A stretch of DNA of 64,000 nt from Macrostomum hystrix (lineage: Eukaryota; Animalia; Platyhelminthes): positions 4,340,001 to 4,404,000 of the forward strand of contig CATNEN010000033.1 of assembly GCA_950097015.1 (NCBI GenBank), read 5' to 3'. Under the pieces are notes generated by a model. That model was given only the letters and a program-made list of their open reading frames with translations. It was not told the DNA's origin and did not search any database. A program made the translations under genes and the position numbers. Below, piece after piece: positions 2,902 to 33,785 of the stretch (positions within the stretch are counted from its first letter, which is position 1; the number at the start of each line of letters is the position of its first letter).

Positions 2902-5900
2902 ATGCCAGACTATTACCTGCATATTCGCCGACATCGCCGGGGTGGCCACCTCGTCCTGGATGCCTGGCGTCGCCAGCTGCGCGATCAATTCAATATTGAA
3001 GAAGCCGGCGGCGGTGACATCCTCCTGCTGACACTGCTTGATGGCGATGGAGCCGCCGATGGCAATGGCAAGTCAAAGACGCCCTGTTTGACTGGCCACG
3101 AACGGGCGGCCGCCTGCTCCCGCGCTCTGGCTCAGTGCCGCGCTGACGGACCTCTGGCTGAGGTGTTCGGCGGCGGGCGCGTAGGAGGCTCCAGCGTCGG
3201 TGGAACCTCCTGGCTGGATGCAGATCCTTCGCTGATGCGATTCTGCAAGCGAAAGGTTTGTAACTAGCTCTGGTTTCGATAGAACTGGCTGCTGGAGGAG
3301 CTGAAGGCTGATGGACATTCAGTAAGGTGGGGTTGAAGGCTGATGGACAGTCAGCAAGGTGGGGCTGAAGGCTGATGGACAGTCAGCAAGGTGGAGTTGA
3401 AGGCTGAGTGAATGGTGTCACAGATTGCTATCGGAAGGGATTAATGCCAATGCAAAGCTCCCAAATCCAGGGATTTCTCCGTTCGCACGGGCCGCTGCAT
3501 CGGCCCGCCGAGGCCCGCTCGGTGTGGCGCCGCCTGCTGACCTCCACCCGGCCGCCCGTCGATCAGCTGCGCGCCTACTTCGGCGAGCCCGTGGCTCTGT
3601 ACTTCGAGTGGATGCACTGCTACAGCTGCTGGCTAGGGCCGCCCGCTGTGTTCGGCCTGCTGCTCTCTCTGGTGTCCCTCCGCTCCGGAGTGTCCGTGGA
3701 CAACAATCCCTACCTGTCGTTGTACGCAGTCGGCCTGGCTGTCTGGGGCTTCGCCTTCCTGAAGCTGTGGCGACGCCGCGAGACAGAGCTGGCGCACGCC
3801 TGGGGCACCCTGGGCCTGGTCCGGCTGGCCTCCAAGCTCAGGCCCGAGTTTCAGGGCTGGAAACGGATCAGCCCCGTCACTGGGGAGCCGGAGATTCATT
3901 ATCCGAGGTGGGAATACACGTTTTATCAGTAGCTATCCTAGCATCAAGATATGGGATCTTCATTAACAACTTGGGGATATGGGATTTTATCAATCAGTAT
4001 CCCAGAATAGGGATATTAAAATGTATTTATTACTATCCCAGAATGGGGACATTGGTTTTTTTTCAATAAATTTCCTAGAATGGGGATATGGGATCTATCT
4101 ATCCCAGAAAGGTACTTGTTTGTATGTAAACGCAAAAAATCATCACTCAGGTGGCGTCGCCGGCTAAAGCAAGTCTGCACCGGCCTAGCAACCGTTGCCA
4201 TGCTGCTAGTCGTATTCGTGTACACGGTGTGCAGCCTGAATCTGCAGGGCATGGTGGAGCCGGTGCACAGGTTCAACTACACCAACCCCTTCCACATCGG
4301 CCCGCTGGCCGCGCACGCCAGGCCTGGCGGAGTTTTCGACCGCTCGCGAACCGACCGGGCCGTCCTGACAGCCGTGCTGCACTCGGCCGGAGTCTGCCTG
4401 CTCAACCGGCTGCTGTTTCGGCGCGTAGCCGAGGCTCTGACCAAATGGGAGAACCATGCCACCGTGGCCGAGCACGAGTCCGCTCTGGTGAGCTCTCTGT
4501 CTCACTCTACTCTCCCCGTCTCACTCTACTTTCCCCGTCTCGCTCTACTCTCCCTGTCTCACTCTACTCTCCCTGTCTCACTCTACTCTCCCTGTCTCAC
4601 TCTACTCTCCCTGTCTCACTCTACTCTCCCTGTCTCACTCTACTCTCCCCGTCTCACTCTACTTTCCCCGTCTCGCTCTACTCTCCCTGTCTCACTCTAC
4701 TCTCCCTGTCTCACTCTACTCTCCCTGTCTCACTCTACTCTCCCTGTCTCACTCTACTCTCCCTGTCTCACTCTACTCTCCCTGTCTCACTCTACTCTCC
4801 CTCTCCCACTGATCCCCTCGCCTCCAGGTGCTGAAGCGCTACGTCCTGGAAGCCTTCGACTACTACGCCGCCCCGCTCTACCTGGCCTTCTACGAGCTCG
4901 ACGTCCTGGCCCTGCGCTCCGCCCTGTTCACCCTCTTCGTTGCCGACTGCCTCCGTCGCCTAGCAACCGAGCTGCTTCTGCCGTGCTGTATTCGCCTGGC
5001 TCACGACCGGGCTAGGCGACTCCGCGACGCCGCCGCCAAGAAGACTGACAGCGGTGACGATGGCGAGCCTCCCATCGGCCCGGCTGGCGATGGCGATGGA
5101 GGCGGTGAGGGCGAAGATGCGATCGCCGATCGGCGCGTGGCGGACAAGAGCCTGCTAGCCGAGGTGTCCTGCGATCGCTACGAGCAGTTCGACGACTACC
5201 TGGAGATGTGCATCCAACACGGCTACATCCTGCTGTTCGCCTCGTCCTTCCCGCTCGCTTCGCTGCTGGCCATCGTCACCAACGCTGTGGAGACTCGCTC
5301 CGATGCCTTCAAGCTGTGCTTCGTGACCAGGTGGGGCCAAGATTCAAGCTTACTCTTCCAATAATCTTGTAGGCAATATTTTTATTATAATAATTGATTA
5401 CACCTGACACAATCGGGCCAGAAGTGCCGCCGACAGCACGGCCGCAGCTATTGCGCGGCGCATCAGAAGGCTACTTACGCTGTTCAGTCCATGGACTGGA
5501 AGATGCCACACCTACCCTCAATTACCCCAGCTAATGCTGGAACACGTTTAACAGCTGAGTGGACTCAAACAAAGCTGAGTTCAAGTGTCTTGCTGAATGA
5601 CACAAAATTTTTCCGTGCAGTCGTGAATCGAACCCTCGACCTTGAATTCGTCCGTCCACTCTGAATCTAATGCATGGTAGTTTTATCTAAAATTTATTAT
5701 CCTAAGTTGTTATATGGGATTTGAACTGGAAATAACCTTTGGATGGATAGGAATTGGACTTAAAAAACTGTAATCAGTAGATAGGATATTTTTAACTAGA
5801 ATCTCCCAATGATAAGATCCCAAAATTCACCGATCCCCCAGGCGCCCAGTCGCTCCGGCCGGTGTCGCGCGCCAGTCGTCCGCCTGGCAGTCGGTGTTGG

Positions 5901-7570: not shown

Positions 7571-9505
7571 ATGTCTTTCCAGCCTCAGTCAGCTTCTCAG
7601 CCGCTGCTGCTATTATGCTGCATCGCTGTCGCGTCGGCTTCCTCGTCGGCATCAGGGTCGGCCCCGTCGATTCTGGTGGCCGTGGCGGCGCGCAACAAGG
7701 CGCACTCGCTAGGCCACGCTCTGGCCTGCCTGCGCCGTCAGCGCTACCCCAAGCACCGGCTGGGCCTTCTGCTGATGGTGGATCACAGCGCGGACGCCAC
7801 CGCCGCCGTGGCTGCAGAGTGGAGCCGAAGCCTGCGGCCATGGTACAGCTTCGTTCAGCTTCTGGTGGGGAGCCATTTTACTAGATATAAAACTTGATAT
7901 AATTTCTTTGCGCCCTACTGATAAGTAGTGTGATTTAAAAGCGAATTCTAACGATTCTAACGTCTTTCCATCCATAGCTTATATGAAAAATTTTCATTCG
8001 TAAATGAACTTGACTCATTGAATATCTCGATTCCCTGACAGGTTGAATCCGAACCGACCGCCTACCCGGGCGAGGCCAGCCAGCTGGACTGGCCGGCGTC
8101 CCGCATGCTTCGCCTCATCCGCCTGCGCCAGCGGTCGCTGGACACGGCCCGCCAGCGCCGATTCGACTTCCTCCTGCTGCTGGACGCTGACGCCCTGCTG
8201 ACGGACCCGACAACGCTGCGAGCTCTGGCAGCCGCGGGCCGACCAGTCGTGGCGCCGCTGCTGCTGACCGGACGGCCGCACTCGCTGGCCGCCAACTTCT
8301 GGTCGGCCATTGGCCAGGACGGCTTCTACAGGCGGGGCGCCGACTATGCCAGAGTGCAAGGCCGTCAGCCCGGCTGGGTCGGCCTGCAGCCGGCCGCCGT
8401 GCTGCACACCTGCGTGCTGCTGTCCACCAGGTCCAATATTCGGCTGCACCCTCCGCCTCGCGATTACCCGGTGGATTGGCCCATAGACGATTTGTCCCTG
8501 TTTCACTGGGCTGCCAGAGGCCTGCAGCCTCGCATTGACAATCGGCGCGTCTATGGCTTCTACCCGGCCTCGGCTGTGGAGCCAGCGGAAGGCCTGGCCG
8601 CCGACCTGCTGGAGCTGGGCAGCTTTCGTCGCCTTCTTACGGATCTGAGGGATCAACTGGCCACCGCACTTCCCCATCCGCATCCGCGTCAACATCCGCG
8701 TCAGCATCCTCATCAACGTACGCGCCCCCCGCCGGTGTTCATCATCGGCCTCGCCAGGCGGCCTGAACGCCTGGCCCGCCTGTCCGCCGCGCTGACAGAC
8801 GCCGGCTGGCCTCACCGGGCCATTCGCGCCGTCGACTGGCGCAGCCTTCAACGTCGCCGAGGTCGGCGACGCCCGATGCGGGCGCTGCCCGGCTATCGCG
8901 ACCCGGCGAGCGGCCGGCCGCTGACCCTTGGCGAGGCCGCCTGCCTGATGAGCCATCGGATTGTCTGGCGTTTAATTCGTAGACTTCGTCTGGATCGGGC
9001 CATCGTACTGGAAGACGACGCCGACCTGTCGCCGGAGTTCGAAGCCCTGACTACGGCGGCGCTGGCCGAAGCCGACGCGCTGCCGACCTGGGATCTGCTG
9101 TACCTGGGCAGGAAGCCGCTTCAGGTTGGAGCGGAGAGACCCGTGCCAGGCAGCCGCTGGCTGCTGCTCCCAGGCTATTCGCACTGGACTGTGGCCTACG
9201 TGCTGACCCGATCGGGGGCCAGGAAGCTTCTTCGCCTGCGTCTGCTGCCCGACCGTCTGGTGCCAGTCGACGAGCTCCTGCCGGCCGCCTACGGAGTCAG
9301 CCCGCACGCCTGGTCTCGCCAGATTGTCTCGCCGTCCGACGATCAACTGGCCGCTCTGTCCGTCTGGCCACTGCCGGTGGAGCCGCACCGTTACACCGGC
9401 ATGCCGGGTCACCGCAGTGACACGGAAGACGCGCCGATGCTTTTGTCGCCAGAGCGGCAGGCGTTTGAGCGGCTTATCGATGAGATGGCGCGGTGTCCGG
9501 CTTGA
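7571..9505 (+). CDS. COLGALT1: Procollagen galactosyltransferase (COLGALT/GLT25D, GT25 family), 2 exons
   Basis: Exon 7571-7864 (signal peptide, ARNKAHSL, DHSADAT) joins exon 8042-9505 in phase 0. Motifs: LLLDAD, NFW, VLEDD, LLYLGRK, YSHWTVAY, PVDELLP, SDTE. Confidence 0.88.
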
Positions 9506-11474: not shown

Positions 11475-12370
11475 AGCTTTGCTTTAGCTTTGCTTTAGCT
11501 TTGCTTTAGCTTTGCTTTAGCTTTGCTTTAGCTTTGCTTTAGCTTTGCTTTAGCTTTGCTTTAGCTTTGCTTTAGCTTTGCTTTAGCTTTGCTTTAGCTT
11601 TGCTTTAGCTTTGCTTTAGCTTTGCTTTAGCTTTGCTTTAGCTTTGCTTTAGCTTTGCTTTAGCTTTGCTTTAGCTTTGCTTTAGCTTTGCTTTAGCTTT
11701 GCTTTAGCTTTGCTTTAGCTTTGCTTTAGCTTTGCTTTAGCTTTGCTTTAGCTTTGCTTTAGCTTTGCTTTAGCTTTGCTTTAGCTTTGCTTTAGCTTTG
11801 CTTTAGCTTTGCTTTAGCTTTGCTTTAGCTTTGCTTTAGCTTTGCTTTAGCTTTGCTTTAGCTTTGCTTTAGCTTTGCTTTAGCTTTGCTTTAGCTTTGC
11901 TTTAGCTTTGCTTTAGCTTTGCTTTAGCTTTGCTTTAGCTTTGCTTTAGCTTTGCTTTAGCTTTGCTTTAGCTTTGCTTTAGCTTTGCTTTAGCTTTGCT
12001 TTAGCTTTGCTTTAGCTTTGCTTTAGCTTTGCTTTAGCTTTGCTTTAGCTTTGCTTTAGCTTTGCTTTAGCTTTGCTTTAGCTTTGCTTTAGCTTTGCTT
12101 TAGCTTTGCTTTAGCTTTGCTTTAGCTTTGCTTTAGCTTTGCTTTAGCTTTGCTTTAGCTTTGCTTTAGCTTTGCTTTAGCTTTGCTTTAGCTTTGCTTT
12201 AGCTTTGCTTTAGCTTTGCTTTAGCTTTGCTTTAGCTTTGCTTTAGCTTTGCTTTAGCTTTGCTTTAGCTTTGCTTTAGCTTTGCTTTAGCTTTGCTTTA
12301 GCTTTGCTTTAGCTTTGCTTTAGCTTTGCTTTAGCTTTGCTTTAGCTTTGCTTTAGCTTTGCTTTAGCTT
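11475..12370. repeat. Perfect 11-bp satellite, ~81 copies
   Basis: (AGCTTTGCTTT)n with no variant unit seen. Confidence 0.97.
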
Positions 12371-12434
12371 CTCAAATCTCTTAAATCTAAATGTCAGAAG
12401 CCCCTTAGAAGTCTGTCCGCTTGCTCTGTCTCTG

Positions 12435-12454
12435 ATTGGCTGGGCGCTATTAAA
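12435..12454 (+). promoter_or_regulatory. Candidate core promoter (inverted CCAAT box plus TATA-like TATTAAA)
   Basis: GATTGGC at 12434-12440 and TATTAAA at 12448-12454, ~100 nt upstream of ATG 12553. Motif match only. Confidence 0.35.
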
Positions 12455-12552
12455 GGGCGAATCAGGAGTCGCAGGGAAACCAAGAGGGAGACGGGTAGTT
12501 TGATTCCAGGAAAAGTATTTGACGTTGAATTTTAATCGCCCGGGCCTCCTCA

Positions 12553-15500
12553 ATGAATAATCCATGCACTCGGAAAGCTTTTCTTATCATACATTCAATA
12601 GTGCTGCACACTATTGGCCACCTAAGTCTGTGAGTATTATAGTTGCAAATCTATTAATAGTCTCATTCGTACACTGGCCAAGTCGCCGCATCAGCCCAGC
12701 ATGTCGCCTCAGGTTGAAATGATCAGCGTCTGCTTTCACAGCCACCCGCCATTCTCGGACTATCGCGAGCAGGCTGTCAAAGACGGCATCGAAGGAGTGT
12801 TCTGGGACCTGACCCGGTCAGGTGTGGCTGACTGCATCGGCAACCGGAGCCTCCAGTTCCAAGTTCGCCGACTCTCCAGCGAGAGTCACCTGCTGGAGGC
12901 GGTGTCTGCTGGGGACTGCCGAATTGGCTTCCCCGCCACGTGGACTCCACTGATGGACCGGCTGGCCGCCACAAGATTTCTGCCGGTTGCTAGGTCGCCA
13001 GGTGAGTGAGAGTGTACACTGCCTGAACGATGAGAAGGCCAGGGCTGATGAGCTTACTGTACACCTTTGTGTGAATGCGTACGGTATCTGTGTGCGTGTT
13101 GTACTCAGAAGTCAGCGGAATGGAAAAAAATGCCCCTCTCTGGCTGCGGGTCATCTGTCATCGAATTAGTTGTTGTGGTTCACCTACATGTGCAGGTAGG
13201 CCTACAGCTAGGTTGGGTAAGCTGCGACTCCCCAGGTCCCCAAAAAAGCGCCGCTCGACCCGCGTCCGGAGGAATGACAGAGAGAAACAACAACAGACTC
13301 ACAGTATCTCGGCTGATGCAACAGTTAGTAGCCGGTCGGTGTTATTATTTGCACTAAAATAGACAGTCTCGTAACCGGTGGGCAGACGAGGTTAGCAAGG
13401 TCTAATTAACTGGGCACAACTATATAGCTAGGTTGGCACCACAGAACTCCGGGGTGGGGTAAGAGAGCGCGCAAGGCGGGTGAGATGTACATTCAACAAT
13501 TAGGGGTAGGCTGGGGCGATCGATACATATGAACTGGGGTGGGGGGCACGCTAGCCGACTGGCGGGGCAGGGAATGAGAAAGAGATGAAAATGATAGGGC
13601 AGAGGTGAGGGCTGAGTCACAACATAAATTTTAAGTGATTAATTTTAAGTGTCAACAGCCTCCTGCGGCTCAATGCTGATTAGCACCAGCGCTCATCAGT
13701 AAAGTGGATTAATGTGGACCTTCTGCGGAGAATGATTCCCCAGAAGCTATAAATAGCTCGTAGCAACAAAACAACCCTAGCTGAAGAAATTATATTTTTG
13801 AAGTCCTTTAGAGTCCTTGATTGGACCAGGCTGGAATGTACTTTACGCCGACCTCCCCGCTCACTGGGCAGGCGCTGTTTGGCTGGACACGACCGGCGGT
13901 CCGCACGCCGACGATGGCGCCTGGCAGCTGCGCACGGTGGCTCAGGCGTGGCCGCTGCTGCTGGTCATCCTTCTGTCCTGCGGCTACGCCGGAGTGGCGG
14001 TCTGGCTCCTGGAGCGATTGCGCAACTCGCAGGAGTTTCCCAGGCCGTTCGTGCGCGGATTCTGGGAGGGCTGTTGGTGGGCCTTCATCACCATGACAAC
14101 GGTTGGGTGAGACTTCGAGTTTGAAATTTTGGAAAACGTGATTTTTTGTAGCAGATAAGTTCATATGTAGTTTTTCTCACCTTCATGAAATCTTCACCGA
14201 AATTATATCTATCTATGTACGTTAGTATGTACTTTAATAGTACATGCATACTTTTTAACTCCACGTGATATTTCAAATACCTGCACTGTTTTCTGCATCT
14301 CCCAAAATACGGGCTCGTATTCACCCAATCGCCATGAAAATCCTTCCAGAATCACAGAGCATCGGCATCGTCGGGATATTCAACGATTCCCGTCGGGGTG
14401 TCTGGTGGAAAGAACCACAAGTATATGCATAATATTTTGCTCACAAAATTTCATCACGCAATCTTGTCGGCTATAATTGTTAACTCGTATTTTGGATTGA
14501 TTAAGTTTTTAACTGATCTGTATGGTGGACATTCACTAAAATCAGCCATTCGGTTTGGGAGCTATCGTGAAGTAGGCAGTGGGTATTTAAAATACCTCCG
14601 TGGGGGATAAATTTTGCGGTCTTTCTAATGTTAGAAGTGAATATTCGTGATAAAATATCCTATCTATGTAATTTTTGTGCTCAATTTTCGGCCTAATCCC
14701 TTTTCGCCTGGTAACTATGCGCTTAGATACGGCGACAGGTCGCCAAAGTCAGTGTGCGGCCGGCTGTTCGCCTTCGCCTGGATCAGCTTCGGACTGGTGG
14801 CCGTGTCCATGTTCACCGCCGGCATCACCGCCGCCCTCAGCGCCCAGGGCCAGCAGCAGTTCGACGATGGCAAACTCATGACAGTTGGGGTGCGGCCGGA
14901 CTGCGTGTGCGATTTCATTTTTACACGAAACCTGTTAATCAAAACTGTGCCTGGTTTCAGATGATTGTGCTGAACGGATCGCACGAGGAGACCCTGGTCT
15001 ATGAGTTCGGCTCCACTCCTGTTGGTGAGCGCTGTGGAGACTGTCTGAGATGAGGCTTGTAGACAAAGCACTGGAAACTGAAACTATGAGAACCAACACC
15101 TCGAGATCCCGCACCCTGAGAAACCATACTTTTGGAACCCCCACACCCTGAGAAAATAGAGCATTGAATTCCACAACATGAGAACCGACGAACCGAAGAA
15201 CCCACACTCTGACAACCCATACTCTGAGAGCAAATTGAAATCCACAACATGAGAACCCGCGACCGAAAACCCCTGATTAACACCCTGACTAACCACACCC
15301 TAAGAACCCACACTCTGAGAGCCCACACTCTGAGAAACCACACTCTGAGAGCCCACACTCTGAGAAACCACACCCTGATAAACCACACCCTGAGAAACCA
15401 CACCCTGATAAACCACACCCTGAGAAACCACACCCTGAGAACCCATGCACGCCCTGAGAACCCAAACATTTAGAAACCACACAAAATCCTCACCCTGAGA

Positions 15501-18500
15501 ACACAGGTCAACCCACACCCTGAGAACCCACACCTTTAAAACCCGAAACCTGTGAACTCACACTTATATAACCCTCAGAACACACCTTTAGAAATCTCAC
15601 TAAAAAGCCACATTTAGTCATAGATTTTCTCCCGCATTTTCCAGTCGTTAATACCTGGGACGATCTGGTGTCAGCCGCAGCCGCCCCACCTCCGGGCTCT
15701 CGGATTTTTTCGCCGTCCAACATGAGTTCCAGATGGACCCACGCGACCGTTCGGCAGCCGCACGGTGTCCTGATGGAGCACTTTATGTACCTGCACGTGC
15801 GGCAGCAGCACCCGCACCGACTGCACGGCAGGGCGACCGCAGCGCAGCCGACTCTGGTCCGGCGCCCCACCCAGCGGGGCCTCCTGGTGCGCGGCCTGCA
15901 GAACAGCCTGGCAGACTGCCTGGCCGACCGCCTGGCCGCTCAGCAGCTCAGCGTCTACGGCCGTCTGGTCGGGCTGGAGCACGCTCACGAGGAGCTCGAG
16001 GTTAGCTGACTGTGGGACTTCTTCGATAGAAAAATTAGGGCTTGAAAGGGATTTCGGGCGCGGGTTCGGGTTATGACAGTTTGGGGTTTGGAGGATTTTT
16101 AGGATCCTCAATTTTAATGACAATTGTGATCGGGGATTTCTGATTTTGGTAGGATTATTTGGATTGAGGATTTCAATTTTAGAATAATTGGGATTGGGGA
16201 TTTCTAATTGTAGTGGGATAATTGGGATTCGGGATTTCTAATTTTAGTGGGATAATTGGGATTCGGAATTTTTAATTGCAGTGGGATAATAGGGATTGGG
16301 GATTTCTAATTGTAGTTGGATAACAGGGATTAGGATTTCTAATTGTAGTGGGATAACTGGGATTGGGGATTTCTAATTGTAGTGTGATAACTGGGATTGG
16401 GGATTTCTAATTGTAGTTGGATAACTGGGATTGGGATTTCTAATTGTAGTGTGATAACTGGGATTGGGGATTTCTAATTTTAGTGTGATAACTGTGATTG
16501 GGGATTTCTAATTGTAGTGTGATAACTGGGATTGGGGATTTCTGATTGTAGTGGGATAACTGGGATTGGGGATTTCTAATTGTAGTGTGATAACTGGGAT
16601 TGGGGATTTCTAATTGTAGTTGGATAACTGGGATTGGGATTTCTAATTGTAGTGTGATAACTGGGATTGGGGATTTCTAATTGTAGTTGGATAACTGGGA
16701 TTAGGATTTCTAATTGTAGTGGGATAACTGGGATTGGGGATTTCTAATTGTAGTGTGATAACTGGGATTGGGGATTTCTAATTGTAGTTGGATAAATGGG
16801 ATTGGGATTTCTTATTGTAGCGGGATAACTGGGATTGGGGATTTCTAATTGTAGTGTGATAACTGGGATTGGGATTTCTTATTGTAGCGGGATAACTGGG
16901 ATTGGGGATTTCTAATTGTAGTGGGATAATTGGGATTGGGGATTTCTAATTGTAGTGGGATAATTGGGATTGGGGATTTCTAGTTGTAGTGGGATAATTG
17001 GGATTGGGGATTTCTAATTGTAGTGGGATAACTGGGATTGGGGATTTCTAATTGTAGTGTGATAACTGGGATTGGGGATTTCTAATTGTAGTTGGATAAC
17101 TGGGATTGGGATTTCTAATTGTAGTGTGATAACTGGGATTGGGGATTTCTAATTTTAGTGTGATAACTGTGATTGGGGATTTCTAATTGTAGTGTGATAA
17201 CTGGGATTGGGGATTTCTGATTGTAGTGGGATAACTGGGATTGGGGATTTCTAATTGTAGTGTGATAACTGGGATTGGGGATTTCTAATTGTAGTTGGAT
17301 AACTGGGATTGGGATTTCTAATTGTAGTGTGATAACTGGGATTGGGGATTTCTAATTGTAGTTGGATAACTGGGATTAGGATTTCTAATTGTAGTGGGAT
17401 AACTGGGATTGGGGATTTCTAATTGTAGTGTGATAACTGGGATTGGGGATTTCTAATTGTAGTTGGATAACTGGGATTGGGATTTCTAATTGTAGTGTGA
17501 TAACTGGGATTGGGGATTTCTAATTGTAGTTGGATAACTGGGATTAGGATTTCTAATTGTAGTGGGATAACTGGGATTGGGGATTTCTAATTGTAGTGTG
17601 ATAACTGGGATTGGGGATTTCTAATTGTAGTTGGATAAATGGGATTGGGATTTCTTATTGTAGCGGGATAATTGGGATTGGGGATTTCTAATTGTAGTTG
17701 GATAACTGGGATTGGGATTTCTTATTGTAGCGGGATAACTGGGATTGGGGATTTCTAATTGTAGTGGGATGATTGGGATTGGGATTTCTAATTGTAGTGG
17801 GATAATTGGGATTGGGGATTTCTAATTGTAGTGGGATAATTGGGATTGGGGAATTCTAATTGTAGCGGGATAATTGGGATTGGGGATTTCTAGTTGTAGT
17901 GGGATAATTGGGATTGGGGATTTCTAATTGTAGTGGGATAACTGGGATTGGGGATTTCTAATTGTAGCGGGATAACTGGGATTGGGATTTCTAGTTGTAG
18001 TGGGATAATTGGGATTGGGGATTTCTAATTTTAGTGGGATAATTGGGATTGGGGATTTCTAATTGTAGTGGGATAACTGGGATTGGGATTTTTAATTGTA
18101 GCGGGATAACTGGGATTGGGATTTCTTATTGTAGTGGGATAATTGGGATTGGGGATTTCTAATTTTAGTGGGATAATTGGGATTGGGGATTTCTAATTGT
18201 AGTGGGATAACTATGACTCTAAGCTGATTTCGCAGACCGTTACGTTCAACACCGAATTTGGCGAGCGGACAGAGCATTGGCCATGTCCCACAGGCTAGTC
18301 TTGTCCCCACTGCCATATGGGATTTCACTGCATATACATGTAGGAAGTGACAAACTGCAAAGTGCAGTTTTCTTAACAACAAAAGCGCAAGAAAATTTTG
18401 TCAAGTTGATGAAGACAAGACTTTCTGCCGGCTTCCAGCTGATCCAAACGCTATATCCCATATATTATATTTCCCATAGAGTGGGATAGCAAAAGTGCCG

Positions 18501-21500
18501 CTTTCTCTGGGGATTTTCTGGGGCTGGGGTTTTTTGGCAAAGCAAGGCTGACAAACAAACAACTGTTATCTGCGACATGCTTAGTTCATGTTCATTTAGT
18601 TCATGCCTAGCGAGATCTCAGATCCTTCCTCTCATCTCCCTGTCGGCTCCTGTCAGCTGTCTCTGAGTTTTAACTGAAATTTTCTTATTAGAATGCTTTC
18701 CTACACGCTTTGCATCGTGTATTGCAGCAAAAATGTATCTATTTTGTCAGGCTTTTACTTTTGCTGAGTCCTGACAGACTGAGGGTCGTACTAGGGAGTG
18801 GAATGGTTGTCTATGTGAGTGAGGAGTTTTGTGGTCTGAGAAAGGAGTGGGGTGTTTGTCTATGAGGGTGAGGAGTTTGTGGTCAGAGAAAGGAGTGGGG
18901 TGGTTGTCCGTGAGGGTGAGGAGTTTTGTGGTCTGAGAAAGGAGTGGGGTGTTTGTCTATGAGGGTGAGGAGTTTGTGGTCAGAGAAAGGAGTGGGGTGT
19001 TTGTCTATGAGGGTGAGGAGTTTGTGGTCAGAGAAAGGAGTGGGGTGGTTGTCCGTGAGGGTGAGGAGTTTGTGGTCTGAGAAAGGAGTGGGGTGGTTGA
19101 CTGTGTGGGTGAGGAGTTTGTGCATGGTCTGAGAAAGGAGTGGGGTGGTTGACTGTGAGGGTGAGGAGTTTGTCGTCAGAGAAAGGAATGGGGTGGTTGT
19201 CTTAGAGGGTCAGGGTTTTGGGTGTAGAGAAGAAGGCGCGAGGTGGTTTTCTGAGAGTTCTGAGGTTCAGAACAGTTTAGAGGTGAGTTCAGAGTTCAGA
19301 GGTGAGAAGTTCCGAGGTTAGAGAACGAAGTGGGGTGTTTGTCCACATGGGGATTGGGTCGAGGTGGAAAATGGGATGCCTGCATAAAACGAAGAGAGTT
19401 GGAGATTGTGGAAAGAGGTCTTATATTTCTGAATTTATTGAGTTGATTCTCCCCGTTGCAGCCGCCTGAGGATCCTCAAAGTCCGGAGGGCGTGGCGCGC
19501 GCCCTCTTCGTTGCCAACCAGCTGCAGCTGCTTGGCCTGGCCGGCTGCCTGGCGCTGCTGCTGCTGCTGTTGCTGGCATGGGAAAAGCTGCGGTGGGAGC
19601 CGCGCAACCCGCACTATCAGTGTGAGGAATTTGGAGGTCTTATTTTAATTTATTTTAACTAGGGATTATCTGGTTCATGGGGCTGAGTAGCAGAGTGGTC
19701 TCTCGCAACAAGGTCCCTGAGCTCGATTCCACGCTAGATTTTTTGGGGCGCAGCCGCATTGAGAGGGCTTGGGGGCTTGTCGTGCAATTTACTCCCTTTA
19801 GAAAGTCAGGGCAGATGTACACACCTGTGTGGGTGTATGCCTGCGTACGGTATCCGTGTGCGTGTTTTCTCAGGAATCAGCGAAATGGGCAGAATTGCCT
19901 CCTCGCCGGCTGCGGGTCTAGTGTCACCAAATGATGTGCCATTCCCCTGAAGTATTATTATTATTATCGTCAGGTTAACAGCAATTCGGCAGGTAAATAA
20001 TGAACGGTCAAACATAATTCAATAGCTTATCGATCCCTGCCTTTTGGACCCCAGAGCCTTGATAAGAGCTTCCTAGATCGTTAATTCCTCACTTCTTATG
20101 CTTGATCCTTGATGATCGAAATTTAGATCCGAAGATCCTTTATCCCAAGATTCTTTATCCCAAGATTCTTTATCCCAAGATCCTTCATCCCAAGATCCTT
20201 CATTCCAAGATCCTTCATCCTTAGATCCTTCATCCCAAGATCCTTCATTCCAAGATCCTTCATCCTTAGATCCTTCATTCCAAGATCCTTCATCCCAAGA
20301 TCCTTCATTCCAAGATCCTTCATCCTTAGATCCTTCATTCCAAGATCCTTCATCCCAAGATCCTTCATTCCAAGATCCTTCATCCTTAGATCCTTCATCC
20401 CAAGATCCTTCATTCCAAGATCCTTCATCCTTAGATCCTTCATCCCAAGATCCTTCATCCCAAGATCCTTCATCCCAAGATCCTTCATCCCAAGATCCTT
20501 CATTCCAAGATCCTTTATCCAAAAATCCTTCATTCCAAGATCCATTATTCCAAGATCCTTCATCCCAAAATCCTTCATCCTAAGATCCTTCATCCCAAGA
20601 TCCTTCATCCCAAGATCCTTCATCCTTAGATCCTTCATTCCAAGATCCTTCATCCTTAGATCCTTCATTCCAAGATCCTTCATCCTTAGATCCTTCATCC
20701 CAAGATCCTTCATCCCAAGATCCTTCATCCCAAGATCCTTCATCCCAAGATCCTTCATTCCAAGATCCATTATCCAAAAATACTTCATTCCAAGATCCAT
20801 TATTCCAAGATCCTTCATCCCAAAATCCTTCATCCCAAGATCCTTCATTCCAAGATTCATTATCCAAAAATCCTTCATCCCAAGATCCTTCATCCCAAGA
20901 TCCATTATCCAAAAATCCTTCATCCCAAGATCCTTCATCCCAAGATCCATTATCCAAAAATCCTTCATCCCAAGATCCTTCATCCCAAGATCCATTATCC
21001 TAAGATCCTTCATCCCAAGATCCTTCATCCTTAGATCCTTCATCCCAAGATCCTTCATTCCAAGATCCTTCATCCTTAGATCCTTCATCCCAAGATCCTT
21101 CATCCCAAGATCCTTCATCCTTAGATCCTTCATCCCAAGATCCTTCATCCTTAGATCCTTCATTCCAAGATCCTTCATCCCAAGATCCTTCATTCCAAGA
21201 TCCTTCATCCTTAGATCCTTCATCCCAAGATCCTTCATTCCAAGATCCTTCATCCTTAGATCCTTCATCCCAAGATCCTTCATTCCAAGATCCATTATCC
21301 AAAAATCCTTCATCCCAAGATCCTTCATCCTAAGATCCTTCATTCCAAGATCCATTATCCAAAAATCCTTCATCCCAAGATCCTTCATCCCAAGATCCAT
21401 TATCCTAAGATCCATTATCCAAAAATTCTTCATCCCAAGATCCATTATCCTAAGATCCTTCATCCCAAGATCCTTCATTCCAAGATCCATTATTCCAAGA

Positions 21501-24090
21501 TCCTTCATCCCAAAATCCTTCATTCCAAGATCCATCATTCCGAGATCCATTATCCAAAAATCCTTCATTCCGAGATCCATTATTCCAAGATCCATTATCC
21601 AAAAATCCTTCATTCCAAGATCCATTATTCCAAGATCCATTATTCCAAGATCCATTATCCAAAAATCCTTCATTCCAAGATCCATCATTCCAAGATCCAT
21701 TATCCAAAAATCCTTCATCTCAAGATCCTTCATCCTAAGATCCTTCATTCCAAGATCCATCATTCCAAGATCCATTATCCAAAAATCCTTCATCCCAAGA
21801 TCCATTATCCTAAGATCCTTCATCCCAAGATCCTTCATTCCAAGATCCATTATTCCAAGATCCTTCATCCCAAAATCCTTCATTCCAAGATCCATCATTC
21901 CAAGATCCATTATCCAAAAATCCTTCATCCCAAGATCCTTCATTCCAAGATCCATTATCCAAAAATCCTTCATCTCAAGATCCTTCATCCTAAGATCCTT
22001 CATCCCAAGATCCATTATCCAAAAATCCTTCATCTCAAGATCCTTCATCCTAAGATCCTTCATCCCAAGATCCTTCATTCCAAGATCCTTCATTCCAAGA
22101 TCCATTATCCAAAAATCCTTCATTCCAAGATCCTTCATTCCAAGATCCTTCATTCCAAGATCCATTATCCAAAAATCCTTCATCCCAAGATCCTTCATTC
22201 CAAGATCCATTATCCAAAAATCCTTCATTCCAAGATCCATTATCCAAAAATCCTTCATCCCAAGATCCTTCATCCCAAGATCCTTCATCCCAAGATCCAT
22301 TATCCAAAAATCCTTCATTCCAAGATCCATTATTCCAAGATCCTTCATCCCAAAATCCTTCATCCCAAGATCCTTCATCCCAAGATCCATTATCCAAAAA
22401 TCCTTCATTCCAAGATCCATTATTCCAAGATCCTTCATCCCAAAATCCTTCATTCCAAGATCCATCATTCCAAGATCCATTATCCAAAAATCCTTCATCC
22501 CAAGATCCTTCATTCCAAGATCCATTATCCAAAAATCCTTCATTCCAAGATCCATTATCCAAAAATCCTTCATCCCAAGATCCTTCATTCCAAGATCCAT
22601 TATCCAAAAATCCTTCATCTCAAGATCCTTCATCCCAAGATCCTTCATCCTAAGATCCTTTAATCCTTTAATCCTAAGATCCATTATCCAAAAATCCTTC
22701 ATCTCAAGATCCTTCATCCTAAGATCCTTCATCCCAAGATCCTTCATTCCAAGATCCTTCATTCCAAGATCCATTATCCAAAAATCCTTCATTCCAAGAT
22801 CCTTCATTCCAAGATCCTTCATTCCAAGATCCATTATCCAAAAATCCTTCATCCCAAGATCCTTCATTCCAAGATCCATTATCCAAAAATCCTTCATTCC
22901 AAGATCCATTATCCAAAAATCCTTCATCCCAAGATCCTTCATCCCAAGATCCTTCATCCCAAGATCCATTATCCAAAAATCCTTCATTCCAAGATCCATT
23001 ATTCCAAGATCCTTCATCCCAAAATCCTTCATCCCAAGATCCTTCATCCCAAGATCCATTATCCAAAAATCCTTCATTCCAAGATCCATTATTCCAAGAT
23101 CCTTCATCCCAAAATCCTTCATTCCAAGATCCATCATTCCAAGATCCATTATCCAAAAATCCTTCATCCCAAGATCCTTCATTCCAAGATCCATTATCCA
23201 AAAATCCTTCATCTCAAGATCCTTCATCCCAAGATCCTTCATCCTAAGATCCTTCATCCCAAGATCCTTCATTCCAAGATCCTTCATTCCAAGATCCATT
23301 ATCCAAAAATCCTTCATTCCAAGATCCTTCATTCCAAGATCCTTCATTCCAAGATCCTTCATTCCAAGATCCTTCATTCCAAGATCCATTATCCAAAAAT
23401 CCTTCATCCCAAGATCCTTCATTCCAAGATCAATTATCCAAAAATCCTTCATTCCAAGATCCATTATCCAAAAATCCTTCATCCCAAGATCCTTCATTCC
23501 AAGATCCATTATCCAAAAATCCTTCATCCCAAGATCCTTCATCCCAAGATCCTTCATCCCAAGATCCTTCATCCCAAGATCCTTCATCCCAAGATCCATT
23601 ATCCAAAAATCCTTCATTCCAAGATCCATTATTCCAAGATCCATTATCCAAAAATCCTTCATTCCAAGATCCATTATTCCAAGATCCTTCATCCCTTGAT
23701 ATTTTTACAAACTTTCTTTTTCAAATATCTGTTTTTACTGAAAATGTTTCTAGCTCATAGATTGTTTATCCTGAGATTGTATTTCTTACATCTTTGATCT
23801 CTAGATCATTGCTCCCTAAATCCTTCATCTGTTAGCATTGACCCTTTGCAGTTGTGGAGAGCAACTGGAAGTACGAGCGTCAGCGCAGAGACGCTGATCT
23901 GGTCCGCCAGCAGCTGCAGCAGCATCGGTCCAGACCTTCAACCACCGCCGCAAATCGACGGCGAAGACGTAGACAGTCTCAGCCGTCGAATTTGCCGCAG
24001 CAGCAGCGGCAGCAGCAGCCGCAGCAGCAGCCGCAGCAGCAGCCGCAGGCGCTGGATTCACTTGACGAAGCCGCAAATGATTTGGTCTAA
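12553..24090 (+). CDS. GluR0/AvGluR1-type ionotropic glutamate receptor-like channel with K+-channel selectivity filter (S1-M1-P-M3-S2-M4), 8 exons, ~556 aa
   Basis: Exons 12553-12629, 12661-13001, 13830-14106, 14727-14883 (or 14889), 14961-15024, 15645-16000, 19462-19621, 23852-24090 join in frame. The spliced pore reads WWAFITMTTVG|YGDRSPKSVCGRLFAFAW. S1-like HPPF...EGVFWDL and S2-like LNGSHEE...LMEH flank it, and M4 is LLGLAGCLALLLLLLLAW. Exon 1 and two junctions (13812 vs 13830, 14883 vs 14889) are less certain. Confidence 0.82.
13006..13175 (+). mobile_element. SINE family 1, 5'-truncated
   Basis: GTGAGAGTGTACACTGCC...GCGTACGGTATCTGTGTGCG...CTCAGAAGTCAGCG...GGCTGCGGGTC. It starts at position +5 of the intron. 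Confidence 0.7.
15270..15535. repeat. 15/18-bp CA-rich minisatellite
   Basis: AAACCACACCCTGAG-type units. Confidence 0.8.
16190..18212. repeat. 33/34-bp G-rich minisatellite, ~60 copies
   Basis: Unit CTGGGATTGGGGATTTCTAATTGTAGTGTGATAA with variants. Confidence 0.95.
18795..19200. repeat. 48-bp G-rich tandem repeat, ~8 copies
   Basis: Unit GAGGGTGAGGAGTTTGTGGTCAGAGAAAGGAGTGGGGTGTTTGTCTAT. Confidence 0.9.
19679..19968 (+). mobile_element. SINE family 1 copy with internal deletion
   Basis: TAGCAGAGTGG, GAGCTCGATTCC, GGCTTGGGGGCTTGTCGTGCAATT, CTCAGGAATCAGCG, GGCTGCGGGTCTAGTG and a (TAT)n tail. Confidence 0.75.
20125..23695. repeat. 15-bp minisatellite, ~235 copies with variant units
   Basis: CCAAGATCCTTCATC / CCAAGATCCATTATC / CAAAAATCCTTCATT variants. 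Confidence 0.97.
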
Positions 24091-24204
24091 GAAAGAATCG
24101 CAGAGTGCCGAGTGCGGATTTTGTACTTTTAGGGTTTCCTTGCACTCGACTGCGATTCCATAGATTAAAAGCAGGCAGATCTTATAGTGACCACCCTAAC
24201 AATT

Positions 24205-24940
24205 CTGCAGGTCATCTGGTAGCTTCAAACCCTTCTCAAGATCATCTGGTAGCTTCAAACCCTGCTGCAGATCATCTTGTAGCTTCAAACCCTGCTGCAG
24301 ATGATCTGGTAGCTTCAAACCCTGCTGCAGATCATCTTGTAGCTTCAAACCCTGCTGCAGATCATCTTGTAGCTTCAAACCCTGCTGTAGATCATCTGGT
24401 AGCTTCAAACCCTGCTGCAGATCATCTGGTAGCTTCAAACCCTGCTGCAGATCATCTTGTAGCTTCAAACCCTACTGCAGATCATCTGGTAGCTTCAAAC
24501 CCTACTGCAGATCATCTGGTAGCTTCAAACCCTACTGCAGATCATCTGGTAGCTTCAAACCCTACTGCAGATCATCTGGTAGCTTCAAACCCTACTGCAG
24601 ATCATCTGGTAGCTTCAAACCCTACTGCAGATCATCTGGTAGCTTCAAACCCTACTGCAGATCATCTGGTAGCTTCAAACCCTGCTGCAGATCATCTGGT
24701 AGCTTCAAACCCTTCTCAAGATAATGTGGTAGCTTCAAACCCTACTGCAGATCATCTGGTAGCTTCAAACAATTGTGCAGATCATCTGGTAGCTTCAAAC
24801 CCTTCTCAAGATAATGTGGTAGCTTCAAACCCTGCTGCAGATCATCTGGTAGCTTCAAACCCTTCTCAAGATAATGTGGTAGCTTCAAACCCTGCCGCAG
24901 ATCATCTGGTAGCTTCAAACAATTGTGCAGATCATCTGGT
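24205..24940. repeat. 30-bp tandem repeat, ~24 copies
   Basis: Unit ATCATCTGGTAGCTTCAAACCCTGCTGCAG. Confidence 0.95.

Positions 24941-25739: not shown

Positions 25740-33785
<8,046 letters not shown>

What the first reader, a model, noticed from the sequence alone, without database searches (positions are those of the whole stretch)
12553..24090. Intron-rich animal gene for a GluR0/AvGluR1-like receptor with a full TVGYGD potassium filter
Seen: splicing gives signal peptide, S1 lobe, M1, a pore loop TMTTVGYGD, M3 (SMFTAGITAAL in place of SYTANLAAF), S2 lobe, M4 and a tail, with no amino-terminal domain. The filter is split by the intron 14107-14726 (TVG|YGD), so neither ORF shows it. Established: this hybrid of a periplasmic-binding-protein clamshell and a K+ pore is known from cyanobacterial GluR0 and rotifer AvGluR1, and canonical animal iGluRs lack GYG. 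Inference: a member of a poorly characterised invertebrate lineage of ligand-gated, possibly K+-selective (inhibitory) channels. Seven introns argue against recent horizontal transfer or contamination.
Basis: partly seen in the sequence, partly recalled or inferred. Interest (0 to 1): 0.85.

Follow-up and report, generated by a model that had tools for sequence, protein, structure and literature searches.

The report
Flatworm receptor channel with potassium filter
This flatworm gene encodes a glutamate-receptor-shaped channel that keeps a complete potassium-channel filter. It belongs to an old animal family, apparently never studied, that may form inhibitory potassium receptors opened directly by a ligand.

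Summary
Eight + strand exons (12553-24090) splice in frame, through GT..AG introns, into a protein of about 549 aa. Its order is putative signal peptide, S1, M1, pore loop TMTTVG|YGD, M3 (SMFTAGITAAL), S2, M4, tail. There is no amino-terminal domain.

No RNA run was listed, so the model rests on homology:
- The Macrostomum lignano orthologue matches exon by exon.
- Five of the seven introns sit at the same position and phase in a hemichordate gene and a cnidarian gene. One of them is the phase-2 intron that splits the filter at TVG|YGD.

The protein belongs to a family (HMM E=2.7e-78) found in Cnidaria, Hemichordata, Annelida, Brachiopoda and Platyhelminthes. Databases call its members only "uncharacterized" or "potassium channel domain-containing".

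Pfam detects only the pore. Predicted structures of two homologues nevertheless match:
- AMPA-receptor chains that hold only the ligand-binding and membrane domains (LBD-TMD chains), over about 430 columns;
- the GluR0 ligand-binding core, which is the best match (Z 21.6 and 19.3).

TVGYGD is invariant in 81 family members. The usual carboxylate-binding arginine is not conserved.

Most likely this is a subunit of a tetrameric channel opened by an extracellular ligand and probably selective for K+. The ligand is unknown. I found no paper describing the family.

The parts
12553..12629 (+). Exon 1: start codon and putative signal peptide (25 aa + 2 nt). Tentative.
   Evidence: ATG at 12553 and donor AAGTCT|gtgagt. 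Hydrophobic stretch at aa 9-27, Kyte-Doolittle 1.66. Similarity to M. lignano here is too weak to decide.
12700..13001 (+). Exon 2: first part of S1, the extracellular ligand-binding lobe. It carries the family motifs PPF, the conserved Cys, and F-P-A-T.
   Evidence: Family HMM, S1 domain E=3.2e-7. tblastn of the M. lignano orthologue covers 12644-13006 at E=1e-18. Conserved columns are retained.
13812..14106 (+). Exon 3: end of S1, M1 (WPLLLVILLSCGYAGVAVWLL), the NSQEFPRPF linker, the pore helix WEGCWWAF, and the first half of the filter, TMTTVG.
   Evidence: In the representative search 36 proteins scored E<=1e-10, the best at 72% identity. Pfam Ion_trans scored 0.004.
14107..14726 (+). Intron 3, phase 2, inside the Gly codon of TVG|YGD. 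It is ancient and its position is conserved.
   Evidence: GG|gtgaga...cttag|A. Glandiceps L001 and Nematostella L002 have the same position and phase.
14727..14883 (+). Exon 4: YGDRSP, M3 with the gate motif SMFTAGITAAL, and the start of S2. An alternative donor at 14889 would add Val-Gly.
   Evidence: Pfam Ion_trans_2 at 3.9e-6, 27.1 bits against a cut-off of 22.5; Lig_chan at 3e-5. The donor at 14883 gives an ungapped fit to the family and to the conserved phase-0 intron before h-h-V-L-N-G-S.
14961..15024 (+). Exon 5: a 64-nt S2 exon (MIVLNGSHEETLVYEFGSTPV).
   Evidence: Glandiceps and Nematostella have an exon of exactly 64 nt at this place, with the same flanking phases 0 and 1. M. lignano match.
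15645..16000 (+). Exon 6: the main part of S2, including G-V-L-M-E (family G-x-L-x-D), R-G-L-L-V and the conserved Cys.
   Evidence: The family S2 profile against bacterial GluR0-like S2 gives hhalign E=1.1e-11.
19462..19621 (+). Exon 7: pre-M4 linker and M4 (LLGLAGCLALLLLLLLAW).
   Evidence: Kyte-Doolittle peak 2.59 at aa 438-456. M. lignano match at 57% identity. The phase-0 and phase-1 introns on either side are conserved.
23852..24090 (+). Exon 8: cytoplasmic tail, basic then Gln-rich, ending in NDLV. Stop codon TAA at 24088-24090.
   Evidence: The junction sequence ...PRNPHYQ|F|VESNWKYERQ matches M. lignano ...PRNPDYQFIEHNWKYERQ.

Best explanation
The locus is an intact gene of a Macrostomum-type flatworm. 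It encodes one subunit of a tetrameric receptor channel of the iGluR/GluR0 superfamily.

Architecture (shown by sequence and homology): a putative signal peptide places S1 outside the cell. M1, a re-entrant pore loop and M3 form an inverted K+-channel-type pore. S2 returns to the outside and, together with S1, forms a class II periplasmic-binding-protein clamshell. M4 and a cytoplasmic tail follow. There is no amino-terminal domain.

Mechanism (inferred): a small extracellular ligand closes the clamshell. This pulls on the M3 gate (S-x-F-T-A-x-I-T-A-A-L, the GluR0-type counterpart of SYTANLAAF) and opens a pore whose filter, T-V-G-Y-G-D under a W-W pore helix, selects K+. Activation would therefore hyperpolarise or shunt the cell.

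The ligand is unknown. The conserved acidic residue and Ser of S2 are kept, but the Arg that binds the alpha-carboxylate of amino acids is missing.

The gene is the flatworm representative of a family inherited vertically since before the split of cnidarians and bilaterians.
For: - Gene model and filter.
- Family membership: HMM E=2.7e-78, with S1 and M1-to-M4 both covered. All invariant family residues are kept: W, G, G, WW, TVGYGD, P, both conserved Cys, NGS, and G-x-L-x-E.
- Closest relative is M. lignano, at 52% identity over 406 tree columns and as sister with support 100. It matches exon by exon.
- Fold: the AF2 model of the Saccoglossus member has pLDDT 88.2. Foldseek's best matches are GluA1/GluA2 LBD-TMD chains, with 426-443 aligned columns in the best ten and E about 1e-13. 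VIA-align's best match is the GluR0 ligand-binding core 1ii5, Z 21.6, rmsd 2.6 A, 210 of 221 residues.
- The M. lignano orthologue model has pLDDT 74, low only in segments that look like retained introns. Its best match is again 1ii5, Z 19.3, 217 of 221 residues; the AvGluR1 LBD scores Z 17.1.
- Sequence link to bacterial GluR0-type proteins: hhalign E=2e-49 over 298 columns. Taken separately, the pore gives 7e-42, S2 gives 1.1e-11 and S1 gives 1.5e-4. BLASTP of the window protein reaches bacterial proteins across S1 plus the pore, E=2.7e-23.
- Topology: hydrophobic segments and N-glycosylation sequons in S1 and S2.
- Ancient, vertical inheritance: five conserved intron positions and phases; a bilaterian clade with support 97 nested among cnidarian paralogues, with bacteria on the other side at support 100.
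- Precedent for K+ selectivity: GluR0 has the same signature and is K+-selective (Chen et al. 1999, as cited in PMC12226733 and PMC12332018).
Against: - No cDNA or RNA evidence exists for this species.
- E1 and the E4 donor are uncertain.
- The window's own spliced protein could not be folded, because it has no reference. The fold evidence comes from homologues at 26-52% identity.
- Pfam finds no SBP_bac_3 or Lig_chan-Glu_bd domain in the S1 or S2 exons. Only 2 of 81 family members give even a weak SBP_bac_3 hit.
- The ligand-binding Arg is absent, so the clamshell might not bind a transmitter-like ligand at all.
- A GYG signature does not guarantee K+ selectivity. From my own memory, not checked here, AvGluR1 was reported to discriminate poorly between Na+ and K+.
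- No electrophysiology exists for any family member.
Confidence: 0.75

Rival explanations
1. Same protein and same architecture, but the channel is a non-selective cation channel and therefore excitatory, despite the TVGYGD signature.
For: The filter lies in an inverted, iGluR-type pore. AvGluR1 carries the TXVGYG signature inside a eukaryotic iGluR (PMC12332018, PMC3483616), and from memory it is not strongly K+-selective. No recording exists for this family.
Against: T-V-G-Y-G-D and the W-W pore-helix pair are invariant in 81 sequences spanning cnidarians to bilaterians. This is what purifying selection on a working K+ filter would produce. The pore is very close to bacterial GluR0-type pores (hhalign E=7e-42), and GluR0 is K+-selective (Chen 1999, via PMC12226733).
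Confidence: 0.15
2. The clamshell no longer senses a diffusible ligand. The protein would then be a constitutive or otherwise regulated K+ channel, or a modulatory subunit, with an extracellular domain used for assembly or adhesion.
For: The canonical Arg is missing in this protein and is not conserved in the family. Pfam LBD models do not match. Some cnidarian members carry extra CUB, Ig or FN3 ectodomains, which suggests protein-protein contacts.
Against: The bilobed fold is predicted with high confidence, and its best matches are closed, ligand-bound LBDs. The S2 acidic residue (D, or E here), the Ser/Thr of N-G-S and the P-x-T of S1 are conserved. Insect IRs show that iGluR-type LBDs that have lost this Arg can still bind other ligands (established knowledge).
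Confidence: 0.08
3. The window copy is a non-functional or unexpressed gene (pseudogene), or the exon model is partly wrong.
For: No RNA run was listed. E1 is weakly supported. The introns are swollen with minisatellites. The flatworm branch in the tree is long, at 1.54.
Against: All eight exons are open, all splice sites are canonical, all family-invariant residues are kept, and the exon-by-exon match to M. lignano shows no frameshift or stop.
Confidence: 0.05
4. The gene was acquired recently from bacteria by horizontal transfer, or the sequence is bacterial contamination.
For: The pore and the LBD are most similar to bacterial GluR0-type proteins.
Against: The gene has seven introns. Five are shared in position and phase with a cnidarian and a hemichordate gene. 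Animal sequences form one side of a branch with support 100, away from bacteria. The protein has M4 and a tail, which the bacterial proteins lack. The neighbouring genes are ordinary animal genes.
Confidence: 0.01

Closest known systems
GluR0 (Synechocystis slr1257) and bacterial GluR0-type SBP-K+ channel fusions
   Same: - Order S1-M1-P-M3-S2, with no amino-terminal domain.
- TMTTVGYGD filter under a W-E-G-F-W-W pore helix, an N-P-x-E-F linker after M1, and an F-T-A gate motif.
- The LBD is the best structural match (1ii5, Z 21.6 and 19.3).
- Profile-profile E=2e-49.
   Different: - The animal proteins add M4 and a cytoplasmic tail.
- They have introns and are inherited vertically in Metazoa.
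- The T-x-E-R arginine that is invariant in the bacterial set is not conserved.
- Pfam SBP_bac_3 and Lig_chan-Glu_bd hit the bacterial proteins but almost none of the animal ones.
AvGluR1 of the rotifer Adineta vaga
   Same: A eukaryotic iGluR-type subunit with M4 and a TXVGYG-type pore signature (PMC12332018, PMC3483616). Its LBD fold matches at Z 17.1 (4io4).
   Different: AvGluR1 is described as having the same architecture as eukaryotic iGluRs, amino-terminal domain included (PMC12332018). This protein has none. I could not obtain its sequence through the tools, so no direct alignment or tree was made.
Canonical metazoan iGluRs (AKDF, NMDA, epsilon, lambda classes; Ramos-Vicente et al. 2018, PMC6307864)
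   Same: The LBD-TMD architecture with M4. Foldseek aligns about 430 columns of the homologue model to GluA1/GluA2 and GluN chains.
   Different: - No amino-terminal domain.
- A K+-channel filter in place of the Q/R/N pore loop.
- SMFTAGITAAL in place of SYTANLAAF.
- The binding Arg is missing.
- For the window's E4 piece, Pfam Lig_chan stays below its gathering score (24.3 against 30.8).
Two-TM and voltage-gated K+ channels (KcsA, KvLm/Lmo2059, KvAP, Shaker)
   Same: The pore helix, filter and inner helix are the best sequence matches in the PDB (4h33 at E=7.7e-16, KvAP, KcsA).
   Different: The pore sits between two extracellular lobes that follow a signal peptide, so it is inverted in the membrane. 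There is no voltage sensor and no cytoplasmic N-terminus. The match covers only about 65 residues.

Membership tests
Uncharacterised metazoan family of LBD-containing K+-filter channels (alignment A1; e.g. Saccoglossus LOC102804213, Nematostella LOC5513742, M. lignano A0A1I8J4Y3) | Full-length match to the family profile, including S1, pore, S2 and M4 | tested here: met
   hmmsearch E=2.7e-78. Domains cover aa 33-128 (3e-7) and aa 166-500 (1.5e-72).
Uncharacterised metazoan family of LBD-containing K+-filter channels (alignment A1; e.g. Saccoglossus LOC102804213, Nematostella LOC5513742, M. lignano A0A1I8J4Y3) | Invariant residues: W, G, G, WW, T-V-G-Y-G-D, P, the two conserved Cys, and G-x-L-x-[DE] | tested here: met
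   All are present in the window protein.
Uncharacterised metazoan family of LBD-containing K+-filter channels (alignment A1; e.g. Saccoglossus LOC102804213, Nematostella LOC5513742, M. lignano A0A1I8J4Y3) | Shared gene structure: a phase-2 intron in TVG|YGD, a 64-nt S2 exon, and introns before and after the M4 exon | tested here: met
   Five of seven introns match Glandiceps (L001) and Nematostella (L002). The intron in M1 has been lost here.
Eukaryotic ionotropic glutamate receptors (iGluR; Pfam Lig_chan, Lig_chan-Glu_bd, ANF_receptor) | Topology S1-M1-pore loop-M3-S2-M4 with a bilobed LBD | tested here: met
   Sequence order and hydrophobic segments. Homologue models match GluA2 LBD-TMD chains and LBD crystal structures.
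Eukaryotic ionotropic glutamate receptors (iGluR; Pfam Lig_chan, Lig_chan-Glu_bd, ANF_receptor) | Amino-terminal (LIVBP-like) domain | tested here: not met
   S1 starts directly after the putative signal peptide. No ANF_receptor hit was found in the family.
Eukaryotic ionotropic glutamate receptors (iGluR; Pfam Lig_chan, Lig_chan-Glu_bd, ANF_receptor) | SYTANLAAF gate motif, and a pore loop without GYG (Q/R/N site) | tested here: not met
   M3 reads SMFTAGITAAL and the pore reads TMTTVGYGD.
Eukaryotic ionotropic glutamate receptors (iGluR; Pfam Lig_chan, Lig_chan-Glu_bd, ANF_receptor) | Pfam Lig_chan at or above its gathering score | tested here: inconclusive
   Exon 4 alone scores 24.3 bits against a cut-off of 30.8; the whole spliced protein could not be submitted. 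All 81 family members hit at E<=0.01, but the first member scores 30.2, also below 30.8.
Eukaryotic ionotropic glutamate receptors (iGluR; Pfam Lig_chan, Lig_chan-Glu_bd, ANF_receptor) | Agonist-binding Arg in S1 (GluA2 R485 equivalent) and acidic residue in S2 (E705 equivalent) | tested here: not met
   The Arg column is not conserved and this protein has Met at that position. The acidic residue is kept (VLME). The mapping is by alignment only.
Prokaryotic GluR0-type channels | A class II SBP clamshell interrupted by a two-helix K+-channel pore with TXVGYG | tested here: met
   hhalign E=2e-49 over S1, pore and S2. 1ii5 is the best structural match. TVGYGD is present.
Prokaryotic GluR0-type channels | No M4 and no C-terminal domain; prokaryotic, intronless gene | tested here: not met
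   M4 and a 78-aa tail are present and the gene has seven introns. The bacterial set ends after S2.
Prokaryotic GluR0-type channels | K+-selective current gated by glutamate or other amino acids | not testable with these tools
   This needs electrophysiology.
Classical two-TM or six-TM K+ channels (Ion_trans_2 / Ion_trans) | K+ signature sequence in a pore loop between two helices | tested here: met
   Ion_trans_2 scores 27.1 bits against a cut-off of 22.5 on exon 4. The best PDB sequence matches are K+ channels.
Classical two-TM or six-TM K+ channels (Ion_trans_2 / Ion_trans) | Pore loop entering from outside with cytoplasmic termini; no extracellular binding domain spliced around the pore | tested here: not met
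   A putative signal peptide, glycosylation sequons and the clamshell lobes flank the pore. The protein therefore does not sit among ordinary two-TM channels.

The most novel reading that the evidence does not exclude
Many animals (cnidarians, hemichordates, annelids, brachiopods, flatworms) keep an ancient class of receptor that works as a K+-selective channel opened directly by an extracellular ligand. That would be an ionotropic, hyperpolarising receptor type not recognised in animal physiology. It would also be a living intermediate between bacterial GluR0 and modern iGluRs: GluR0-type pore and LBD, with M4 already acquired but no amino-terminal domain yet. Because the alpha-carboxylate Arg is lost, its agonists may not be amino acids.
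Probability: 0.5. Interest if true: 0.9.

Novelty: new variant of a known kind. Interest (0 to 1): 0.78.

Why it matters
The origin of iGluRs from a K+ channel fused to a binding protein is usually illustrated with two proteins, bacterial GluR0 and rotifer AvGluR1. Reviews state that all eukaryotic iGluRs share the NTD-LBD-TMD-CTD plan (bioRxiv 10.1101/2021.01.27.428399). The landmark classification of metazoan iGluRs does not mention K+-filter receptors at all (PMC6307864).

This work shows a whole animal family with a GluR0-type pore and LBD plus M4. Its intron structure has been conserved since before the cnidarian-bilaterian split.

If these channels are K+-selective and ligand-gated, they would be a new kind of fast inhibitory or chemosensory receptor. 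They would also give a direct experimental handle on how M4, the amino-terminal domain and the loss of K+ selectivity were acquired, and could serve as natural templates for chemogenetic silencers. Suitable test species already exist: Nematostella, Hydra, Saccoglossus and Macrostomum.

Tried and rejected
- RNA evidence: the look-up of sequencing runs listed no run for 12500-16100.
- Pfam on single exons: nothing on the S1 or S2 exons.
- ESM Atlas with exon 6: no usable hit.
- The whole spliced protein has no reference. It therefore could not be given to Pfam, the structure predictor or the large protein searches. Exon references, scripts on /scratch/model.fa and homologue ids were used instead.
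- The profile search of PDB sequences returned only K+ channels among the 60 rows shown, so LBD homology had to be shown by hhalign on separate pieces and by fold comparison.
- Lingula gene structure: the protein is not on record.
- Exon 1: MAFFT suggested an IHS..LH similarity to M. lignano. However, tblastn aligned the same M. lignano stretch about as weakly to an in-frame read-through of intron 1. I therefore treat E1 as unconfirmed.
- E4 donor, 14883 or 14889: HMM scores are 232.2 and 231.9, which does not decide. Homologue exon lengths (160 nt, against 157 or 163 here) do not decide either. I prefer 14883 because it gives an ungapped alignment.
- A tree including canonical iGluRs, plant GLRs, AvGluR1 and K+ channels was not built, because no tool gave me those sequences and I did not type them from memory.
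- Eight literature searches found no description of this animal family. This covers only the held library.
- Horizontal transfer, contamination and ordinary-K+-channel readings were considered and rejected.

Full report
**1. What is in the sequence**

Reading 12400-16200, 19380-19700 and 23680-24200 and assembling candidate exons in a script gives an eight-exon + strand gene:
- E1 12553-12629
- E2 12700-13001
- E3 13812-14106
- E4 14727-14883 (a second in-frame donor lies at 14889)
- E5 14961-15024
- E6 15645-16000
- E7 19462-19621
- E8 23852-24090

Every intron is GT..AG and the phases are mutually consistent. The product is 549 aa, or 551 aa with the alternative donor.

Only after splicing does the pore read TMTTVG|YGD. 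M3 reads SMFTAGITAAL.

A hydrophobicity scan finds four segments: a putative signal peptide (aa 9-27), M1 (175-193), M3 (238-256) and M4 (438-456). N-glycosylation sequons lie in both presumed extracellular stretches.

The introns are largely minisatellites. The neighbouring genes are ordinary animal genes: anoctamin, a GT25 glycosyltransferase, a Cys-loop receptor, an ankyrin protein and a DUSP.

**2. Is the splice model real?**

No RNA run was listed for this stretch, so I tested the model by homology.

Searching 1.84 billion cluster representatives with exon 3 alone gave 410 proteins at E<=1e-3. The two best, at 72% identity, are Macrostomum lignano models. This fits earlier notes of this scan that call the genome a Macrostomum-type flatworm.

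In every homologue, TMTTVGYGDRSP is contiguous.

tblastn of the M. lignano protein against the window hits E2 to E7. At the filter intron the matches end at 14107 and begin at 14728, and E7 is spanned exactly (19462-19620). For the other exons the matches lie within or run a few bases past my boundaries.

I then fetched the genes of a hemichordate member (Glandiceps, L001) and a cnidarian member (Nematostella, L002) and mapped their proteins exactly onto the DNA. Both share the following with the window gene:
- a phase-2 intron in the Gly codon of TVG|YGD;
- the phase-0 intron before h-h-V-L-N-G-S;
- an S2 exon of exactly 64 nt followed by a phase-1 intron;
- the phase-0 intron before the M4 exon;
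- the phase-1 intron after the M4 exon.

Both also share a phase-0 intron in M1 that the flatworm gene has lost.

So five of the window's seven introns are ancient. This validates the model without cDNA. E1 and the exact E4 donor remain uncertain.

**3. The family**

The family was surveyed with a search from the Saccoglossus protein and with cluster look-ups. Members occur in:
- Cnidaria: Nematostella, Actinia, Exaiptasia, Acropora, Montipora, Pocillopora, Porites, Dendronephthya, Rhopilema, Hydractinia, Hydra;
- Hemichordata: Saccoglossus, Glandiceps, Ptychodera;
- Annelida: Capitella, Owenia, Dimorphilus;
- Brachiopoda: Lingula;
- Platyhelminthes: Macrostomum.

All are named "uncharacterized", "predicted protein" or "Potassium channel domain-containing". 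One M. lignano paralogue is labelled "PBPe domain-containing".

Many full-length members sit on contigs of about 2 kb from assemblies of public sequencing runs. These may be transcripts, which would mean the family is expressed and spliced as predicted in corals, but I did not check this.

In an alignment of 81 members, the following are invariant: W, G, G, WW, T-V-G-Y-G-D and P. The window protein keeps all of them. It also keeps both conserved cysteines, N-G-S and G-x-L-x-[DE].

It scores E=2.7e-78 against the family profile, and S1 is detected separately at 3e-7.

**4. Is there a clamshell?**

Pfam sees only the pore: Ion_trans_2, Ion_trans and Lig_chan in 81 of 81 members, and SBP_bac_3 weakly in 2 of 81. 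It finds nothing on the window's S1 and S2 exons. A profile search of PDB sequences shows only K+ channels among its best rows.

Saccoglossus member:
- The AlphaFold2 model, built with the family alignment, has pLDDT 88.2.
- Foldseek's best matches are GluA1/GluA2 LBD-TMD chains, with 426-443 aligned columns in the best ten and E about 1e-13.
- VIA-align's best match is the GluR0 ligand-binding core 1ii5 (Z 21.6, rmsd 2.6 A, 210 of 221 residues). Next come Nostoc GluR0 and glutamine-binding proteins, whose Z scores are tied with it within 1.

M. lignano orthologue of the window gene (52% identical):
- The model has pLDDT 74. Confidence is low only in stretches that look like retained introns in that database gene model.
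- 1ii5 is again the best match (Z 19.3, 217 of 221 residues). The AvGluR1 LBD scores Z 17.1.

Sequence profiles agree independently of structure:
- The family against six bacterial GluR0-type proteins gives hhalign E=2e-49 over 298 columns.
- Split into pieces, the pore gives 7e-42, S2 gives 1.1e-11 and S1 gives 1.5e-4, and the cross-comparisons are non-significant.
- BLASTP of the window protein itself reaches bacterial members across S1 plus the pore (E=2.7e-23).

The window's own spliced protein could not be folded, because it has no reference. Its fold is inferred from these homologues.

**5. Relationships**

A quick maximum-likelihood tree of 44 rows gives the following:
- The window protein is sister to M. 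lignano (support 100).
- Both lie inside a bilaterian clade (support 97) of flatworm, annelid, brachiopod and hemichordate sequences.
- That clade nests among several cnidarian paralogue groups.
- The bacterial proteins are on the other side of a branch with support 100.

The tool warned that a long Nematostella branch meets the bacterial branch, so the root within the animals is not resolved. Together with the shared introns, the tree indicates vertical descent from at least the cnidarian-bilaterian ancestor. It excludes recent transfer.

I could not include canonical iGluRs, AvGluR1 or K+ channels, because no tool supplied their sequences.

**6. Mechanism**

Shown:
- the architecture;
- the inverted K+-type pore with an invariant filter and aromatic pore helix;
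- a GluR0-type gate motif, S-x-F-T-A-x-I-T-A-A-L;
- a bilobed LBD in two homologues;
- M4 and a cytoplasmic tail.

Inferred:
- tetrameric assembly;
- gating by clamshell closure;
- K+ selectivity, by analogy with GluR0 (Chen et al. 1999, cited in PMC12226733 and PMC12332018), and hence a hyperpolarising response.

The ligand is open. Mapped by alignment, the family keeps the P-x-T of S1, the Ser/Thr of S2 and the acidic residue of S2 (D in the family, E in VLME here). The Arg that clamps the alpha-carboxylate, which is invariant in the bacterial set as T-x-E-R, is not conserved, and this protein has Met at that position.

**7. Comparison with what is known, and novelty**

GluR0 lacks M4, a tail and introns. 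AvGluR1 is described as having the full eukaryotic architecture (PMC12332018). Canonical iGluRs have an amino-terminal domain, SYTANLAAF and no GYG.

This family is therefore a distinct architecture within the superfamily: a GluR0-type core plus M4.

Reviews state that all eukaryotic iGluRs share the NTD-LBD-TMD-CTD plan (bioRxiv 10.1101/2021.01.27.428399). The metazoan classification does not mention K+-filter receptors (PMC6307864). Eight full-text searches found no description of the family, but the library is incomplete.

I rate the finding as a new variant of a known kind.

**8. Verdict**

- Observation: confirmed.
Selectivity and gating are inferred. An amino-acid ligand is doubtful. E1 and one donor site are unsettled.
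- No operator restriction came into play.

Noticed in passing
related proteins P0190-P0200, P0209, P0214, P0215, P0273 (Hydra), P0217, P0222, P0043: Many cnidarian members of the family carry an N-terminal CUB plus Ig module (680-800 aa) or FN3 repeats (up to 1520 aa) where iGluRs have their amino-terminal domain. This would be an independent way of adding an ectodomain to the same core.
   Followed up: no
L003 4733-6157 and L004 8001-9494 (ENA sample ERZ26222911): Two full-length, intronless family genes lie on eukaryote-looking contigs beside reverse-transcriptase and THAP9-like transposase ORFs. In the tree they fall inside a cnidarian paralogue group. They may be retrocopies.
   Followed up: partly
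window 27456-27638 (+): The C-terminal part of the M. lignano database models A0A1I8J4Y3 and A0A1I8F3F7 matches this downstream stretch at 54% identity. Those models are therefore chimeras (SGF29, then the channel with retained introns, then the downstream neighbour), and downstream synteny is conserved between the two flatworms.
   Followed up: partly
window 12000-12370: A perfect 11-bp tandem array (TTTAGCTTTGC, 33.7 copies, 100% matches) lies about 180 bp upstream of the start codon.
   Followed up: no
window 16128-18212, 18795-19220, 20127-23695, 15280-15482, 24205-24940: The introns and the 3' flank of the gene consist largely of minisatellites. These include a 34-bp unit in 62 copies and an array reported at periods 45 and 60 (79 and 60 copies) whose consensus is built on a 15-bp unit. 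They create long spurious ORFs on both strands.
   Followed up: no
window 13812-14106 compared with L001 3000-3438/13784-13879 and L002 3653-3861/4663-4758: The phase-0 intron inside M1 (W-L-L|D/E), shared by the hemichordate and cnidarian genes, is absent from the flatworm gene. The flatworm gene instead has two introns of its own, at 12630-12699 and 13002-13811.
   Followed up: yes
window 24079-24087: The predicted protein ends in N-D-L-V after a Gln-rich tail. This could be a PDZ-type C-terminal ligand. It was not tested, and the M. lignano C-terminus is mispredicted, so conservation is unknown.
   Followed up: no
window 3408-5361 (+), 8105-9502 (+), 37190-37549 (+), 44054-48681 (-), 57561-57998 (-): The neighbours are ordinary animal genes: anoctamin (E=2e-31), a GT25 glycosyltransferase, ankyrin repeats, a DUSP phosphatase, and a Cys-loop receptor. 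Only one Cys-loop exon, 46514-46918, was confirmed by Pfam; the ORF at 44054-44845 had no hit.
   Followed up: partly
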